64,000 bases of DNA, from NCBI RefSeq assembly GCF_006345805.1, contig NC_043002.1, forward strand, positions 111,538,001 to 111,602,000, in the 5' to 3' direction. Source of the DNA: Octopus sinensis (taxonomy: Eukaryota). Below are positions 3,928 to 26,277 of this stretch, piece after piece (position 1 is the first letter of the stretch; every line of letters starts with the position of its first letter). A model generated the notes under the pieces. The model did not search any database. It worked only from the letters and a program-made list of their open reading frames with translations, and was not told where the DNA came from. A program made the translations under genes and the position numbers.

Positions 3928-4062
3928 ATGGACATGATTGAAAATTTGATGTTACTTTTGATGGTTATATATGTGGTTTTATGTCCTTACACCAAAGTAG
4001 AAGAGAGCTTCAATCTTCAGGCTATACATGATATCATTTATCACCAACAAAATATCTCTCAG
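3928..4062 (+). CDS. ALG12: ALG12 coding exon 1 (ATG at 3928)
   Basis: Translates [45 protein letters not shown], containing the ALG12 motif [16 protein letters not shown]. Donor GTAAGC at 4063. An upstream acceptor (tgtag, 3895) implies a non-coding exon further 5'. Confidence 0.95.
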
Positions 4063-4383: not shown

Positions 4384-6398
4384 GATCAACTAATGATTAA
4401 TAAAGCCGTAACTGAAGACAGCCACAGAAAGAAGAAAGGCCTCAGTATGGCCTGGATTGACTACAAAAAGGCGTTTGATAGCATCCCCCACACATGGATC
4501 CTCGAAACACTAGTCATTAACAAAGTAGCACCAACAATCATAAAATTCATAGGGCACTCTATGAATAAATGGCAAACAGTCCTACACCTCCAAACAAAAG
4601 AGGGACTCATGAAAACCAAAGACATCCCCATTAGAAGAGGAATATTCCAGGGAGACACGCTCTCTCCACTCCTTTTCTGCTTGGCACTGTCACCTCTATC
4701 TGATATGCTAAATAGAACTGGATGCGGATATAAATGTTACGGCAAAACGATCAGCCACCTTTTATATATGGATGACCTAAAACTATATGCTGCAAATGAC
4801 AAACAGCTGGAAACACTATTAAAGACAGTTCATGGATTTACCAAAGAAATAGATATGAAATTTGGATTAGAAAAATGCACCAAAGTAACCATGAAAAGAG
4901 GAAAACTAGTTAAGAGTAACAACATCACACTAGATAAAACCAATGAAATAAAAGAATTAGACCAAAGCCAAACTTACAAATACTTAGGAATCCATGAACT
5001 AGATAAGACACAACACACACAAATGAAAGAGAAAATAAAAAAAGAATATTATAGACGAGTTAGATCAATACTAAAAACAGAGCTCAATGCTAAAAACAAG
5101 ATAATAGGTATCAACACTTTAGCTGTCCCAGTTATAAGTTACAGCTACAATATCCTTAACTGGACACGAAATGAACTGTCCAAAATAGATAGGAAAACAA
5201 GAAAAATACTGACAGGATCTAGGATGCATCACCCAAAATCTGACATAGAAAGACTATATATACAACGTATAGAAGGTGGTAGAGGCCTTATACAGCTGGA
5301 AAACTACTATAAAATAACCACCATAGGACTGCAAAAATACCTACTTCAGAAGGAAGGAAAACTGATCCAGATAGCAGCAAAACACGAGCAAAACAAAAAA
5401 CTGTTCTCAGTATTTAAGAAGCTGACAAATACAAACAAGAAATCATACCACCTAATAAACACGAAGAAGAAGAAGAAGATGATGAAGAACAACAAAAGCT
5501 ATAAAACAAATGAAATCCAAACTAAAAATAGAACAGCAACGAACCATGATAAAACGATGGCAAGAAAAGCCCCTTCATGGTAAATACTGCACTAAACTAA
5601 ACGCAAAAGAAATAGACAAAGAAAAATCCCAGCAATGGTTGAGAAGCTCAGGACTCAAAGCAGAAACAGAGGGATTTTTAATTGCAGCACAAGACCAAAG
5701 CCTCCCCACCAGAAATTACCAAAAACATGTAATGAAAAGAAATATAACAAGTAACTGCAGAATATGTGGAGATGGACAAGAAACAATAAATCATATTATC
5801 TCTGGCTGCCCAGTCGTGGCTAAGAAGGAATATATTCACAGACATGACAGAGTTGGAACCTACATTATGGAATAACAACAGCAAAAAGATGGTAGAGGCA
5901 CACACCAGAAAAGGTCACAGAAAACGAGAAAGCAACCATAATCTGGGATATGCCGATACACACAGATAGAGAAATTAAGGCCAACAGACCAGATATAGTT
6001 GTCAGAGATCATGAAGAAAAAAATGCTTTCTAATTGATGTATCAATACCGGCAGATGACAACGTGTCTCTAAAAGAAATGGAGAAACATTCAAAATACAA
6101 AGACCTGGAAATAGAGGTAACCAGAATGTGGAATCTGAAAACAGAAACAATTCCTATCATAGTAGGTGCATTAGGCATGATAAAAAAATATTCAGACAAA
6201 TACATAACACAAAAACACCAGGACTTACAAACACATATAACATACAGAAAATTGCACTACTAGGCACTGCACACATCCTACGCAGAACACTTTCCATACA
6301 ATAACCATCAGAGCATCACAACAAATCACAGCACATACCCAAGGCACACAGAGCTGCGCTCGGTAGTGAAGTGAAAGCACGCTATAAAAATAAAACTA

Positions 6399-6447: not shown

Positions 6448-8485
6448 GATCAACTAATGATTAATAAAGCCGTAACTGAAGACAGCCACAGAAAGAAGAA
6501 AGGCCTCAGTATGGCCTGGATTGACTACAAAAAGGCGTTTGATAGCATCCCCCACACATGGATCCTCGAAACACTAGTCATTAACAAAGTAGCACCAACA
6601 ATCATAAAATTCATAGGGCACTCTATGAATAAATGGCAAACAGTCCTACACCTCCAAACAAAAGAGGGACTCATGAAAACCAAAGACATCCCCATTAGAA
6701 GAGGAATATTCCAGGGAGACACGCTCTCTCCACTCCACTCCTTTTCTGCTTGGCACTGTCACCTCTATCTGATATGCTAAATAGAACTGGATGCGGATAT
6801 AAATGTTACAGCAAAACGATCAGCCACCTTTTATATATGGATGACCTAAAACTATACGCTGCAAATGACAAACAGCTGGAAACACTATTAAAGACAGTTC
6901 ATGGATTTACCAAAGAAATAGATATGAAATTTGGATTAGAAAAATGCACCAAAGTAACCATGAAAAGAGGAAAACTAGTTAAGAGTAACAACATCACACT
7001 AGATAAAACCAATGAAATAAAAGAATTAGACCAAAGCCAAACTTACAAATACTTAGGAATCCATGAACTAGATAAGACACAACACACACAAATGAAAGAG
7101 AAAATAAAAAAAGAATATTATAGACGAGTTAGATCAATACTAAAAACAGAGCTCAATGCTAAAAACAAGATAATAGGTATCAACACTTTAGCTGTCCCAG
7201 TTATAAGTTACAGCTACAATATCCTTAACTGGACACGAAATGAACTGTCCAAAATAGATAGGAAAACAAGAAAAATACTGACAGGATCTAGGATGCATCA
7301 CCCAAAATCTGACATAGAAAGACTATATATACAACGTATAGAAGGTGGTAGAGGCCTTATACAGCTGGAAAACTACTATAAAATAACCACCATAGGACTG
7401 CAAAAATACCTACTTCAGAAGGAAGGAAAACTGATCCAGATAGCAGCAAAACACGAGCAAAACAAAAAACTGTTCTCAGTATTTAAGGAAGCTGACAAAT
7501 ACAAACAAGAAATCATACCACCTAATAAACACGAAGAAGAAGAAGAAGATGATGAAGAACAACAAAAGCTATAAAACAAATGAAATCCAAACTAAAAATA
7601 GAACAGCAACGAACCATGATAAAACGATGGCAAGAAAAGCCCCTTCATGGTAAATACTGCACTAAACTAAACGCAAAAGAAATAGACAAAGAAAAATCCC
7701 AGCAATGGTTGAGAAGCTCAGGACTCAAAGCAGAAACAGAGGGATTTTTAATTGCAGCACAAGACCAAAGCCTCCCCACCAGAAATTACCAAAAACATGT
7801 AATGAAAAGAAATATTACAAGTAACTGCAGAATATGTGGAGATGGACAAGAAACAATAAATCATATTATCTCTGGCTGCCCAGTCCTGGCTAAGAAGGAA
7901 TATATTCACAGACATGACAGAGTTGGAACCTACATACATTGGAAGCTATGCCAACATTATGGATAACAACAGAAAAAAGATGGTATAGGCACACACCAGA
8001 AAAGGTCACAGAAAACGAGAAAGCAACCATACTCTGGATATGCCGATACACACAGATAGAGAAATTAAGGCCAACAGACCAGATATAGTTGTCAGAGATC
8101 ATGAAGAAAAAAATGCTTTCTAATTGATGTATCAATACCGGCAGATGACAACGTGTCTCTAAAAGAAATGGAGAAACTTCAAAATACAAAGACCTGGAAA
8201 TAGAGGTAACCAGAATGTGGAATCTGAAAACAGAAACAATTCCTATCATAGTAGGTGCATTAGGCATGATAAAAAAATATTCAGACAAATACATAACAAA
8301 AACACCAGGACTTACAAACACATATAACATACAGAAAATTGCACTACTAGGCACTGCACACATCCTACGTAGAACACTTTCCATACAATAACCATCAGAG
8401 CATCACAACAAATCACAGCACATACCCAAGGCACACAGAGCTGCGCTCGGTAGTGAAGTGAAAGCACGCTATAAAAATAAAACTA

Positions 8486-9850: not shown

Positions 9851-10582
9851 AAATGTATTTCTAATGTTTGTAGATTCACCAACTGGTAACAGGTGAAAAA
9901 TGGACATGATTGAAAATTTGATGTTCCTTTTGAATGCCTATGTCCCCACCCACTTCTTTTTTATAAAACCATCCAATCATACCAGTCTTGGCACCACAAA
10001 ATATTAAACTATTTGGAAATCAAGTCAGTGAGAATACTTTTTATGTTACATCATATAATGTAGTCCCAGTTACAATGGCTTTGAAAAAATGCTGGATGAT
10101 CATGGCTGGAATGCCTTTGTTTTATGTTCTTATACCAAAGTGGAGGCGCAATGGCCCAGTGGTTAGGGCAGCGGACTCGCAGTCATAGGATCGCGGTTTC
10201 GATTCCCAGACCGGGCATTGTGAGTGTTCATTGAGCGAAAACACCTAAAGCTCCACGAGGCTCCGGCAGGGGATGGTGGTGATCCCTGCTGTACTCTTTC
10301 ACCATAACTTTCTCTCACTCTTACTTCCTGTTTCTGTTGTACCCGTATTTCAAAGGGGCCGGCCTTGTCACTCTCTGTGTCACGCTGAATATCCCCGAGA
10401 ACTACGTTAAGGGTACACGTGTCTGTGGAGTGCTCAGCCACTTACACGTTAATTTCACGAGCAGGCTGTTCCGTTGATTCGGATCAACCGGAACCCTCGT
10501 TGTCGTAACCGACGGAGTGCTTCCAATCCAATATACCAAAGTAGAAGAGAGCTTCAGTCTTCAGGCTATGCATGATATCATT
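9851..10582 (+). pseudogene. Disrupted duplicate of ALG12 coding exon 1 (pseudo-exon) in intron 1
   Basis: 9851-9931 matches 3873-3960 (acceptor and ATG). 10120-10141 plus 10543-10582 match the rest ([18 protein letters not shown]). Interrupted by ~185 bp of intron-5 DNA and a SINE; no donor site. Confidence 0.88.
10142..10531 (+). mobile_element. SINE family A (tRNA-derived head), full length
   Basis: Head GGAGGCGCAATGGCCCAGTGGTTAG with A/B boxes; 11-bp TSD TATACCAAAGT at 10131-10141 and 10532-10542. Confidence 0.9.
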
Positions 10583-10654
10583 TATCAACAAAAAAACGAA
10601 AAACCGTATTTGAATAAGTTCACCTTTTTCTTCTTCTTCTCTTTGTATTTTCAG

Positions 10655-10787
10655 TATGATCATTTAGAGTTCCCAGGAGTTGTTCCTCGCTCATTTATTG
10701 GACCACTCTTCATATCTATGATATCTGCACCTTTTGCATTATTTGCTAACTGGCTGCATCTGAATAAGTTATTCATGCAACATGTCG
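10655..10787 (+). CDS. ALG12: ALG12 coding exon 2 (133 nt)
   Basis: ttttcag acceptor; YDHLEFPGVVPRSFIGPLFISMISAPFALFANWLHLNKLFMQHV; donor GTTAGT; phase 0 to 1. Confidence 0.95.
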
Positions 10788-10871
10788 GTTAGTATTTGTA
10801 AAGTATATATTTTTTTTATATGTAATAATAATAATAATAATAATAATAACAATAATAATAATAATAATAAT

Positions 10872-14907: not shown

Positions 14908-16069
14908 GTTAGTGCAATGTGGAGCTAGTGAATGAAGGCATACTTTGTTGGCTGTGTAAATAATAACTGAAGCACACTTGCAAACATTTAACTGAAATAT
15001 TTATTGCCAGACATAAAGTTCATTAGGTGTTAGCTATTCCTAACGAACACCATAAATGTTTGCTGACTGGGAGTGAAACAAATTGCTGTGAAATTACAAA
15101 AATTAAAGCTATTTGTGTGACATGCGGTTGGCCCCAAAATATACAAAGTCAACTGCGCAAATCTCTGTTGTGACAGAGGTCCTTGACTGTTTTCCCTTGG
15201 CCATTTGAGCTCTCAGGTATATGCCAAATGGTTTTCATAGGAGACCAGAAGCTAAATTCTAGAATATCTGAGAAAACCATGTCACATCACACTTCATGCT
15301 GACTGGTTGATTAACAAACTGATCATGGGAAACTATGATGGTTTGCTTGTGGTGTCTGAATGATTATCTAGCAGTTGGGGTTTCAAGCCTGTCATGTATA
15401 TATATATATGTATATGTATATGTATATGTTTGTGTATGTGTGTGTTTTACTATCTCCTTGCTTTGACTTTTGCATGACAGCCGTAAACAAGTGTCACCAT
15501 CATGGTATGTGTGATTTGTGGGAAATTTGGCAGCTACTGAAAGCAGGTACCCCAACTACATAGAGGCTCCCTCGTATGTACATTATAAGTTTTGTTGAGA
15601 AAGTAGTTAATAATGAAGATAGCTAATGTACTACAAACTTCTGTTTTTAGCATACTCAGTGTTTTAGGAGGATTTGAAGTAATATTTAAGTCTCAAAAGT
15701 CAATAATTTATCAACTTGGCCATTTAACTAACCTACTTTTTATCATATTTTAAATAATTTCTCTTAATATTCAAAATAAGTTAAGGTGGTGAGCTGGCAG
15801 AACTGTTAGCATGCTGGGCAAAATGCTTAGCAATATTTCATCTGTCTTTACATTCTGAGTTCAAATTCTGTTGAGGTTGAATTTGTCTTTCATTCCTCTT
15901 GGGGTCAATAAAATAAGTACCAGTTGAGGTCGATGGAATCTACTCAGCTCCCTCTCCCAAAATTACTGGCTTGTGCCAAATGAAATCAATATTCAAGATA
16001 AAATAAATTATGTATAAGAAATATTGAATTTCTAAATCTCTCGTAGAGACATGTACGGTGGTGGGGCGA

Positions 16070-16361
16070 TAGAATGGTTGTATACTGTCAATCTAACAAG
16101 AACGTGACAGTAGGGGGTACACCACCGTTGTATAGCCCTAGGAGGCATTGAATGCCTCCTGACAGCTTCGACACATTTTTTCCCTTTGTCCTTATATACA
16201 TATATATGTGTCCTTATATACATATATATATGTATATAAGGACACAGGGAAAAAATGTGTCGAAGCTGTCAGGAGGCATTCAATGCCTCCTAGGGCTATA
16301 CAACGGTGGTGTACCCCCTACTGTCACGTTCTTGTTAGATTGACAGTATACAACCATTCTA
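16070..16361. repeat. Long near-perfect palindrome
   Basis: 16070-16185 is the exact reverse complement of 16246-16361 (116 bp); 16208-16245 is a spacerless 38-bp palindrome; 22-bp extra duplicate at 16186-16207. Confidence 0.97.
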
Positions 16362-16432
16362 ATAAATTATGTGTTATAGGGAAAACAAAACCAAACCATT
16401 TAACAATGAAATCTGTTTATTTTTCATTATAG

Positions 16433-16627
16433 TATTATTAGCTTTGCAATCATGGTTACATGGAAGACACACATCATTTCTATGGTTCACTGGAACTGCA
16501 ATTATTATATTTCGCTCTGATGTTACCATGCTGCTTGGAATTTACCTGCTCATGGATCTTGTCACACGTAGACTTAGTCTTAAAAATGCTGTTGCTATAA
16601 TTATTTTTGCTGGTGGCATTATTTTAG
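16433..16627 (+). CDS. ALG12: ALG12 coding exon 4 (195 nt)
   Basis: cattatag acceptor; VLLALQSWLHGRHTSFLWFTGTAIIIFRSDVTMLLGIYLLMDLVTRRLSLKNAVAIIIFAGGIIL; donor GTAAGT. Confidence 0.93.
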
Positions 16628-16702
16628 GTAAGTCTCTCTGAAAACCATTTCACAAAATTCTGTGTGTGTTTGTGTGTGTGTAATATATATGTATATGTTT
16701 GT

Positions 16703-26053: not shown

Positions 26054-26277
26054 AATTAAATGGAATAGCTTACGAGTCCCCCCCCCCCAAAAAAAAAACT
26101 CGCAGTTTCATTTAAAATACAATTCTGCTACACTGGGCGTTCATCTGTAATGTATTCTATTAAATCCTCCTGGTCAATCACAGCTGGCAAAGTGTCATAA
26201 CGTACAGAATACAATTCATAAACATCAAACTCCAAACTCAATTTCATCATTGTCTCTTCCTCTACGATCGCCGCCTT

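What the first reader, a model, noticed from the sequence alone, without database searches (positions are those of the whole stretch)
16070..16361. Near-perfect 292-bp palindrome 71 nt upstream of ALG12 exon 4
Seen: the 116-bp outer arms are 100% complementary and continue through a spacerless 38-bp core; the only defect is a 22-nt duplicated bulge. Each arm holds its own palindrome AGGAGGCATT-x-AATGCCTCCT, and both ends read TA. No other copy of the arm is evident in the window. Inference: either a very young TA-flanked foldback MITE or a fold-back inversion. Transcribed, it would give ~135 bp of perfect dsRNA next to a 3' splice site, a candidate hairpin-RNA/endo-siRNA source or ADAR target; as DNA it could extrude a cruciform.
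Basis: partly seen in the sequence, partly recalled or inferred. Interest (0 to 1): 0.72.

Follow-up and report, generated by a model that had tools for sequence, protein, structure and literature searches.

The report
LINE-tail inverted dimer in ALG12 intron
The near-perfect 292-bp palindrome is real. It is one copy of a recurrent octopus retrotransposon insertion type: two truncated copies of a LINE 3' end joined head-to-head. It is not a unique structure or a TA-flanked MITE, so it is mostly ordinary, though the way this LINE builds such hairpins is unusual.

Summary
The palindrome at 16070-16361 is confirmed. Removing 22 nt (16185-16206) leaves a perfect 270-bp palindrome, and the RNA fold is -290 kcal/mol (z = -30).

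It is not unique and not a MITE.
- The inserted unit is asymmetric, 16014-16360/1. It has an unpaired 56-nt "tail" (16014-16069) left of the palindrome and is flanked by an 11-12-bp target-site duplication, AATAAATTATGT.
- The genome matches the Octopus sinensis assembly. It holds about 570 copies of the arm at 3 or fewer mismatches in a 26-mer.
- Among the 100 best arms there are 20 (+,-) pairs (18 close, 2 about 2.2 kb apart) and no (-,+) pairs.
- TSDs in other copies vary from 6 to 13 bp. Most copies sit in (TA)n.
- Each half of a pair is truncated at its own point.
- The arm is the last 136 nt of the 3'UTR of an abundant APE-type LINE (ORF1 with a CCHC knuckle; ORF2 with APE, RT and zf-RVT). 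The "inner palindromes" are conserved 3'UTR stem-loops.

Best reading: a young LINE-mediated retrocopy made by priming on both target strands, with the two cDNAs joined in a self-complementary TA stretch. The architecture mirrors Penelope-like element insertions, but the partner is a LINE. dsRNA, editing or siRNA roles remain untested. Interest is modest.

The parts
16002..16013 (.). Left copy of the target-site duplication AATAAATTATGT (11-12 bp; the first A is ambiguous)
   Evidence: An identical 12-mer lies at 16361-16372. It sits in the A/T-rich tail of an older interspersed repeat.
16014..16069 (-). 56-nt 'tail' (ext): ATAAGAAATATTGAATTTCTAAATCTCTCGTAGAGACATGTACGGTGGTGGGGCGA. It is part of the insertion, lies outside the palindrome, and is the antisense of the optional last 56 nt of the LINE 3' end.
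   Evidence: It is shared by many copies. It forms the 3' terminus of LINE copies L055 and L057. It is present on only one side in 16 of 17 paired copies.
16070..16205 (-). Left arm: antisense copy of the last 136 nt of the LINE 3'UTR (monomer positions 57-192)
   Evidence: 98% identical to the family monomer. About 83% identical to the 3'UTR end of LINE copy L055.
16084..16111 (-). Stem-loop SL2 of the LINE 3'UTR (ACTGTCA...TGACAGT), left-arm copy; the right-arm copy is at 16320-16347
   Evidence: Compensatory changes across LINE subfamilies, e.g. CTGTCA/TGACAG against AGCCAT/ATGGCT.
16140..16160 (-).
   Evidence: 4 of its 6 pairs show changes on both sides across LINE subfamilies. Both arms of this copy share two private CpG>TpG changes in the loop.
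16185..16206 (.). 22-nt extra segment, an imperfect tandem duplication; the only departure from perfect symmetry
   Evidence: Deleting it gives 0 mismatches over 270 bp. Direct repeat D1.
16207..16246 (.). Central spacerless 40-bp palindrome in the TA-rich stretch (TGTGTCCTTATATACATATA|TATATGTATATAAGGACACA); the junction of the two halves
   Evidence: Inverted repeat I2, 100% complementary, 0 spacer. Both halves end at monomer position 192, at the arm/L1 boundary.
16226..16361 (+). Right arm: sense copy of the last 136 nt of the LINE 3'UTR, ending at the alternative 3' end '(a)' ...CAACCATTCT(A), without the tail
   Evidence: 99% identical to monomer positions 57-192. The same end is used by TSD-flanked solo copies L022, L027 and L005 and by LINE copies L056 and L058-L060.
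16361..16372 (.). Right copy of the target-site duplication AATAAATTATGT
16433..16629 (+). ALG12 coding exon 4 (context, not part of the element); 3' splice site 71 nt after the palindrome
   Evidence: Matches PDB 9s6t_A mannosyltransferase residues 159-225. The best database hit to the queried exons is Argonauta hians ALG12 at 91%. Exon order from tblastn.

Best explanation
The palindrome is a retrotransposed insertion (16014-16360/1) in ALG12 intron 3. It consists of two 5'-truncated copies of the 3' end of an octopus APE-type LINE, joined head-to-head.

Shown:
- The arm is the terminal 136 nt of that LINE's 3'UTR.
- The insertion carries an 11-12-bp target-site duplication.
- The family has two alternative cDNA start points 56 nt apart. 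End (a) is ...CCATTCTA. End (b) adds the 56-nt tail.
- The window copy has end (b) on the left and end (a) on the right, as do 16 of 17 pairs examined.
- The two halves of each pair are truncated independently, so the pairs arise anew at insertion.

Inferred mechanism:
- After the staggered endonuclease cuts, both exposed 3'-OH ends prime reverse transcription. One starts at site (b) and the other at site (a), probably on the same RNA or on RNAs from one source copy.
- The two antisense cDNAs then anneal to each other wherever their ends are self-complementary. In this copy that is the TATATACATATATA stretch.
- Each cDNA is filled in on the other, which gives a perfect palindrome with an unpaired tail on one side.

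The inner 'palindromes' are the LINE's conserved 3'UTR stem-loops, which are the probable reverse-transcriptase recognition signal.

For the host the element is most likely neutral intronic DNA. When ALG12 is transcribed it must form about 135-142 bp of near-perfect dsRNA, which is a plausible ADAR or Dicer substrate, but nothing here shows that it is used.
For: - Repeat family: the 121-nt arm gives 1496 first-look candidates, and all scored matches are 94-100% identical. The exact 26-mer has 70 hits; at 3 or fewer mismatches it has 572 hits, against 0 for the control.
- Orientation: among the best 100 arms there are 18 close (+,-) pairs, 2 (+,-) pairs about 2.2 kb apart, 2 tandem pairs at 365 nt, and 0 (-,+) pairs.
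- TSDs: window 11-12 bp, L017 11, L022 11, L027 9, L005 13, L025 9-11, L024 6-8. Most other copies sit in (TA)n.
- Independent truncation: inner end points of the two halves in monomer coordinates include 192/192 (window), 299/299, 241/162, 173/252, 94/255 and 60/362, with 0-21 nt of junction overlap.
- Link to the LINE: L054-L060 carry the ORF2 C-terminus, the stop codon, then about 600 nt of 3'UTR ending in L1-arm(+/-tail) followed by (TA)n or (CT)n(TA)n.
- ORF2: homologues carry Exo_endo_phos + RVT_1 + zf-RVT. APE hits lie in 1132-1134-aa open frames.
- ORF1: a 2.1-kb ORF1-only derivative has the same ends. An ORF1-like region lies upstream of APE in L048.
- Same source for both arms: the window arms share 2 private CpG>TpG changes, and the L028/L029 arms, 2.1 kb apart, share a private G>T.
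- Stem-loops: 8 of 23 pairs change on both sides, and 0 of 500 shuffles reach the covariation score.
Against: - No empty site could be examined.
- The dual-priming step is inferred from end products only.
- The shared private changes could also come from gene conversion between arms.
- Three pairs are (b)/(b) (L026, L034, L041). These need a second RNA or a snap-back.
- Compact pairs with similar spacing (84, 88, 94, 104 nt) leave room for copying of an already palindromic master.
- That APE and the arm-bearing 3'UTR lie in the very same LINE copies rests on matching ORF sizes and homology.
- The covariation rests on only two or three independent LINE lineages.
Confidence: 0.75

Rival explanations
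1. A palindromic master element (a hairpin 'SINE-like' unit: arm, core, arm', tail) is transcribed and retrotransposed as a whole. On this view the window copy is a faithful copy of an existing palindrome and was not built at insertion.
For: Several compact pairs have similar spacing between the arm 26-mers: 84, 88 (window), 94 and 104 nt. Two of them carry the same TTTTTTTCC variant in both arms. The (b)/(a) end combination is nearly constant.
Against: The junction coordinates and the centre differ in nearly every pair examined, including strongly asymmetric ones (94/255, 241/162). Inverted arms also flank 2.1-kb ORF1 copies and sit upstream of tandem monomers. No sibling with the window's two private changes was found among the scored copies.
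Confidence: 0.1
2. The elements are mobilised by a Penelope-like element (RT plus GIY-YIG endonuclease). PLE insertions are known for inverted 5'-truncated copies, partial tandems, a 30-40-bp tail at one end, and (TA)n targets.
For: The architecture matches the published description of PLE insertions point by point (PMC8557442). Octopus genomes hold recently active Penelope families (PMC13282606).
Against: Every coding element found attached to the arm is a LINE: ORF1 with a CCHC knuckle, and ORF2 with APE, RVT_1 and zf-RVT. No hammerhead ribozyme was found in the element.
Confidence: 0.07
3. One reading: a TA-flanked foldback MITE moved by a DNA transposase.
For: Long, nearly identical inverted arms, both ending in TA. 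Small size. Many copies lie in TA-rich DNA.
Against: The insertion bounded by the TSD includes a 56-nt unpaired tail. TSD length varies from 6 to 13 bp. Single-arm copies with TSDs and variable 5' truncation exist. The arm is a LINE 3'UTR.
Confidence: 0.03
4. A local DNA-level fold-back (replication template switch) duplicated a pre-existing single-arm insertion, or the inversion is a long-read assembly artefact.
For: The centre is a TA-rich, self-complementary stretch prone to template switching. The arms are 100% identical. The assembly is PacBio-based (PMC10700109).
Against: The second arm stops exactly at the family's canonical end (a). The 12-bp TSD brackets the whole structure. The same structure recurs at 18 or more loci on many chromosomes.
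Confidence: 0.03

Closest known systems
Penelope-like element insertion architecture (pLTRs, inverted 5'-truncated copy, one-sided 30-40-bp 'tail', (TA)n targets in Naiads; Craig et al. 2021, PMC8557442)
   Same: Head-to-head 5'-truncated copies. Partial tandems (365-nt period, 2.1-kb units). A short extension present at one end only. Strong (TA)n bias. TSDs hard to see in microsatellites.
   Different: The coding partner here is an APE-type LINE with ORF1, not RT plus GIY-YIG. The tail is 56 nt. No hammerhead ribozyme is present. [quoted passage not shown]
L1 twin priming (5' inversion of LINE-1 insertions; own knowledge, and PMC2837659 listed)
   Same: One TSD-flanked insertion with an inverted 5' part and a direct 3' part. 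It is explained by the second nick priming reverse transcription.
   Different: In twin priming the two parts come from adjacent, non-overlapping stretches of the RNA. Here both halves copy the same 135 nt, giving a true palindrome. The second priming site is a fixed alternative 3' end rather than a random internal site.
Stringent LINE/SINE 3'-tail sharing (e.g. eel UnaL2/UnaSINE1) and ORF1-only LINE derivatives such as mammalian HAL1 (own knowledge)
   Same: Short non-coding and ORF1-only derivatives share the partner LINE's 3'UTR end with conserved stem-loops and a simple-repeat tail.
   Different: No pol III head was found, so these are deletion derivatives rather than true SINEs. They insert preferentially as inverted dimers.
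Self-palindromic repeats as ADAR hyper-editing substrates (frog Harbinger repeat; Porath et al. 2017, PMC5625713)
   Same: A repeat that is itself a near-perfect palindrome and would fold into long dsRNA without a second copy nearby. That paper reports an exceptionally high density of loci able to form long near-perfect dsRNA in octopus.
   Different: Here the palindrome is made by a LINE, not by a DNA transposon. Editing of this locus was not examined.

Membership tests
Foldback / TA-TSD MITE (Tc1-mariner/Stowaway-like) | Terminal inverted repeats form the very ends of the inserted DNA | tested here: not met
   The TSD-bounded insert is 16014-16360/1. Its left 56 nt have no inverted partner.
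Foldback / TA-TSD MITE (Tc1-mariner/Stowaway-like) | Fixed-length target duplication (TA) | tested here: not met
   11-12 bp here; 6-13 bp in six other copies.
Foldback / TA-TSD MITE (Tc1-mariner/Stowaway-like) | Ends shared with a transposase-encoding autonomous element | tested here: not met
   Longer relatives encode LINE ORF1 and ORF2. No transposase domain was found by Pfam.
Non-LTR (LINE) retrocopy made by target-primed reverse transcription | 3' end identical in position and sequence to the partner LINE's 3'UTR end | tested here: met
   L054-L060: ORF2 stop, then about 600 nt of 3'UTR ending in L1-arm(+/-tail). 70-85% identity to the monomer, collinear.
Non-LTR (LINE) retrocopy made by target-primed reverse transcription | Fixed 3' end with variable 5' truncation | tested here: met
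   Outer ends are fixed at monomer position 1 or 57. Inner ends run from 60 to 372.
Non-LTR (LINE) retrocopy made by target-primed reverse transcription | Target-site duplications of variable length | tested here: met
   6-13 bp in seven copies.
Non-LTR (LINE) retrocopy made by target-primed reverse transcription | Partner encodes an AP-type endonuclease and a reverse transcriptase | tested here: met
   RVT_1 + zf-RVT in the family. Exo_endo_phos + RVT_1 + zf-RVT in 1145-1160-aa homologues and in the 61%-identical copy L048. APE hits lie in 1132-1134-aa open frames. Not read from a single full-length arm-bearing copy.
Non-LTR (LINE) retrocopy made by target-primed reverse transcription | Movement through an RNA intermediate | not testable with these tools
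   Needs a retrotransposition assay or polymorphism data.
L1-type twin-priming 5' inversion | Inverted 5' part and direct 3' part inside one TSD | tested here: met
L1-type twin-priming 5' inversion | The two parts derive from adjacent, essentially non-overlapping RNA segments | tested here: not met
   Both halves cover monomer positions 57-192.
Penelope-like element | RT fused to a GIY-YIG endonuclease | tested here: not met
   Coding relatives carry APE, RVT_1 and zf-RVT. A GIY-YIG element with this 3' end was not specifically sought.
Penelope-like element | Inverted or tandem pseudo-LTR arrangement with a one-sided short tail; (TA)n targets | tested here: met
   compared with PMC8557442.
Penelope-like element | Hammerhead ribozyme in the repeat (canonical clades) | tested here: not met
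   The Rfam E-value scan of 15700-16700 lists only sub-threshold hairpin matches.
SINE sensu stricto | Pol III-type head (tRNA, 5S or 7SL derived) | tested here: not met
   No such Rfam match in 15700-16700. The monomer is 5'UTR plus 3'UTR of the LINE derivative.
Annotated miRNA / hairpin-RNA gene | Match to a curated family above its gathering score | tested here: not met
   The best match is MIR7723 at 101.6 bits against a gathering score of 200. Matches occur on both strands and to many unrelated hairpin models.
Annotated miRNA / hairpin-RNA gene | Small RNAs or A-to-I clusters mapping to the arms | not testable with these tools
   No RNA data were available.

The most novel reading that the evidence does not exclude
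An APE-type LINE lineage in octopus routinely integrates by priming on both target strands. It thereby produces the inverted/tandem/'tail' architecture so far regarded as a hallmark of Penelope-like elements. In doing so it seeds genes with hundreds of self-folding, near-perfect 100-300-bp hairpins, such as this one next to ALG12 exon 4. These would contribute to the exceptional load of long dsRNA and hyper-editing reported for octopus.
Probability: 0.3. Interest if true: 0.6.

Novelty: new variant of a known kind. Interest (0 to 1): 0.35.

Why it matters
For this locus the stakes are small. It is a young, probably neutral intronic transposon insertion, not a unique structure.

At family level two points deserve a specialist's look.
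- An AP-endonuclease LINE seems to generate overlapping head-to-head dimers, partial tandems and a one-sided tail. The literature ascribes these features to the GIY-YIG endonuclease of Penelope-like elements and says they are not seen in LINE integration. If that holds, the cause lies in the RNA ends and priming geometry rather than in the type of endonuclease.
- Each such insertion is a ready-made long perfect hairpin inside a transcript. That gives a concrete, countable source for part of the unusually high dsRNA potential and hyper-editing of octopus transcriptomes.

Tried and rejected
- Rfam scan for ribozymes, tRNA heads or known hairpin genes: only sub-threshold generic miRNA-model matches on both strands.
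- Pfam on the 483-aa ORF: only a weak zf-CCHC hit. The protein database gave one Octopus bimaculoides fragment.
- A Penelope RT partner was considered because the architecture fits, but every coding relative found is a LINE.
- A joined-flank query for an empty-site haplotig in the same assembly found only the filled locus and copies of an older repeat in the left flank.
I used single 26-mer counts and coordinates instead.
Full-length LINE 5' ends and further pairs were therefore not read.
- The 3'UTR of the more distant LINE copy L048 shows no recognisable arm, so it was not used for covariation.
- I asked whether one arm type accumulates more changes than the other. There is no consistent pattern, and the sample is biased towards clean arms.
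- The Argonauta ALG12 locus was not fetched for an empty-site test, because its introns would be too diverged to align.

Full report
**Observation.**
- The repeat finder reports arms 16070-16211 and 16220-16361: 142 nt, 99% complementary, 8 nt apart.
- The outer 116 nt of each arm pair perfectly.
- Removing 22 nt at 16185-16206 leaves a 270-bp palindrome without a single mismatch, centred at 16226/16227. That segment is a near-duplicate of the following 22 nt.
- As RNA, 16000-16440 folds at -290.4 kcal/mol against -97.7 +/- 6.4 for shuffles.
- The inner palindromes lie at 16140-16160 and 16271-16291.

**Genomic context.** The genome has 2,719,151,902 bases in 13,516 contigs, and contig 10 is 105,892,736 bases long. 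These figures match the published statistics of the Octopus sinensis assembly GCA_006345805.1 (PMC10700109). The exon at 16433-16629 is the fourth coding exon of ALG12 on the + strand. The queried exons are 91% identical to Argonauta hians ALG12, and tblastn gives the exon order. The palindrome therefore lies in intron 3, 71 nt before the 3' splice site.

**It is a repeat, and the repeat is larger than the palindrome.**
- One arm finds 1496 first-look candidates in the genome, and every scored match is 94-100% identical.
- An exact arm 26-mer occurs 70 times. With up to 3 mismatches it occurs 572 times, against 0 for the reversed control.
- Alignment of copies shows that 56 nt to the left of the palindrome (16014-16069, here called 'ext' or tail) belong to the repeat.
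- In the window the stretch 16014-16360/1 is flanked by the direct repeat AATAAATTATGT, at 16002-16013 and 16361-16372.
- Other copies outside microsatellites have flanking duplications of 11 (L017), 11 (L022), 9 (L027), 13 (L005), 9-11 (L025) and 6-8 bp (L024). Most of the rest sit in (TA)n, and some have (CT)n on one side.
- An asymmetric insert with variable-length duplications is not what a TA-duplicating DNA transposon leaves behind.

**Anatomy of the family.** In window orientation the basic unit of about 365 nt is ext (56 nt), arm (136 nt), L1 (about 95 nt) and L2 (about 80 nt). It occurs in these forms:
- head-to-tail tandems with a 365-nt period (L030);
- TSD-flanked single copies with a fixed outer end and a variable inner end;
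- a 2.1-kb version with a 483-aa ORF between L2 and L1 (L031, L032).

The ORF family is very abundant: 13,942 first-look candidates, 50-93% amino-acid identity, many intact, often tandem. Even a copy only 53% identical (51% by tblastn) keeps the same arm/ext arrangement (L045). Pfam gives only a weak CCHC knuckle. The only outside homologue is an Octopus bimaculoides protein.

**The coding partner is a LINE.**
- A chimeric copy fuses the N-terminus of the 483-aa ORF to a LINE ORF2 C-terminus (L049/L053).
- Searching with that C-terminus finds a huge family: 26,971 first-look candidates, with intact frames of 1131-1181 aa.
- In the seven closest copies the stop codon is followed by about 600 nt of 3'UTR that ends in L1-arm. 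Some then carry the 56-nt tail (L055, L057) and others do not (L056, L058-L060). (TA)n or (CT)n(TA)n follows.
- The arms of the window palindrome are therefore the last 136 nt of this LINE's 3'UTR.
- The family has two alternative 3' ends, (a) ...CAACCATTCTA and (b) 56 nt further on.
- ORF2 homologues carry Exo_endo_phos + RVT_1 + zf-RVT.
- APE hits lie in open frames of 1132-1134 aa.
- In the 61%-identical copy L048, a region similar to the 483-aa ORF lies just upstream of the APE.
- The 483-aa protein is thus the LINE's ORF1, and the 2.1-kb element is an ORF2-less derivative.

**The inner palindromes are 3'UTR stem-loops.** An alignment of ten 3'UTR ends from different subfamilies folds into four helices, and 8 of 23 pairs change on both sides. 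Examples are AGGAGG/CCTCCT against AGAGA/TCTCT, and CTGTCA/TGACAG against AGCCAT/ATGGCT. 93% of cells are paired against 28-38% when the partners are slid, and 0 of 500 shuffles reach the observed covariation score. The independent lineages are few, so this is supportive rather than conclusive. It fits the established picture of LINEs whose reverse transcriptase recognises a 3' stem-loop (own knowledge).

**The palindromes are made at insertion.**
- Among the 100 best arms there are 18 close pairs. All are (+,-), with the TA-rich inner ends facing each other, 48-506 nt apart (88 nt in the window).
- There are also two (+,-) pairs about 2.2 kb apart around ORF1 copies, two tandem pairs, and no (-,+) pair.
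- Mapped onto the monomer, each half of a pair starts at a fixed outer end and stops at its own inner point. Examples are 192/192 (window), 299/299, 233/235, 241/162, 173/252, 94/255 and 60/362. The two alignments overlap by 0-21 nt at the junction. One master palindrome cannot explain that.
- In 16 of 17 pairs, one half starts at end (b) and the other at end (a). L026 is (b)/(b), and L034 and L041 also look (b)/(b).
- Both arms of the window copy share two private CpG>TpG changes. The two arms flanking the ORF1 copy in L028/L029, 2.1 kb apart, share a private G>T. The two halves of an insertion therefore come from one source.

**Mechanism (inference).**
- After staggered cleavage both 3'-OH ends prime reverse transcription, one at (b) and the other at (a). 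One RNA has one site of each kind, which would explain both the (b)/(a) rule and the shared private changes.
- Both cDNAs are antisense, so they can pair with each other only where the sequence is self-complementary. In the window that is the TATATACATATATA stretch at the arm/L1 boundary, which is exactly the centre of symmetry.
- Fill-in on each other then gives a perfect palindrome with the tail on one side only.
- The extra 22 nt is best seen as slippage at or after joining.
- With zero differences between two 135-nt arms and about 0.36% per My (JC 0.065 at 18 My; PMC13282606), the insertion or its last homogenisation is younger than roughly 3 My.

**Comparison with known systems.**
- The arrangement of an inverted 5'-truncated copy, partial tandems, a short one-sided tail and (TA)n targets is almost word for word the published description of Penelope-like element insertions. 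That paper adds that such structures are not seen in LINE integration (PMC8557442).
- Here the attached genes are LINE genes and no hammerhead ribozyme is present. I therefore file this as 'works like a PLE insertion, is not a PLE'.
- Classical L1 twin priming shares the idea of second-strand priming, but it yields non-overlapping parts, not a palindrome.

**Function.**
- Nothing indicates a host function.
- The hairpin lies outside the usual branch-point zone.
- It matches no curated RNA family above threshold.
- It would be a good ADAR or Dicer substrate. Porath et al. found octopus exceptional both in hyper-editing and in the density of loci able to form long near-perfect dsRNA, and noted that self-palindromic repeats are edited without a partner (PMC5625713). 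That link is a hypothesis for RNA data, not a finding.

**Limits.**
- No empty site was seen.
- The structural census rests on about 30 fetched loci plus the coordinates of 100 arms.

Noticed in passing
window 15800-16000: An older interspersed repeat (SINE-like): copies 77-87% identical, 1061 first-look candidates in the genome. The LINE-derived palindrome inserted into its A/T-rich tail.
   Followed up: partly
window 10496-10640: A diverged second copy of the ALG12 exon-1 coding sequence ([20 protein letters not shown]...) lies in frame directly upstream of exon 2 (about 10650-10819). The better exon 1 is at 3928-4062. It could be a duplicated or alternative first exon, or a pseudo-exon.
   Followed up: no
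window 4384-5580 and 6448-7600: Two near-identical reverse-transcriptase-type ORFs (DQLMINKAVTEDSHRKKKGLSMAWIDYKKAFD...) lie in ALG12 intron 1. This is a duplicated or tandem LINE of another family.
   Followed up: no
window 26134-26253 (-): A fragment of the same LINE ORF1 family (61% identical to residues 437-477 of the 483-aa ORF), about 10 kb downstream of the palindrome.
   Followed up: no
L031 (G000:C2:157054900-157064899) and places listed, e.g. C5:62292009-62298106: ORF1-only 2.1-kb LINE derivatives form head-to-tail arrays of two to four units, many with intact ORFs. The ORF1 family has 13,942 first-look candidates, so this derivative may rival its LINE parent in copy number.
   Followed up: partly
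places listed (e.g. C4:139971440, C10:56098680, many 1134-aa frames): Dozens of LINE ORF2 copies have intact 1131-1181-aa frames, and some score identically. This suggests the LINE is active or was very recently active in this octopus.
   Followed up: partly
L062 (G000:C20:32611555-32612211 +/-1500): A LINE copy whose 3'UTR runs, after about 290 nt, straight into a 5'UTR and an ORF1 copy without the arm. It is either a recombinant or a tandem junction of a different kind.
   Followed up: no
ext 16040-16066 and arm 16116-16128 (and their partners): The tail contains ACGGTGGTG and the arm contains CACCACCGT. In the sense RNA these could pair across alternative end (a) and enclose SL2. This may bear on why two start sites exist.
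   Followed up: no
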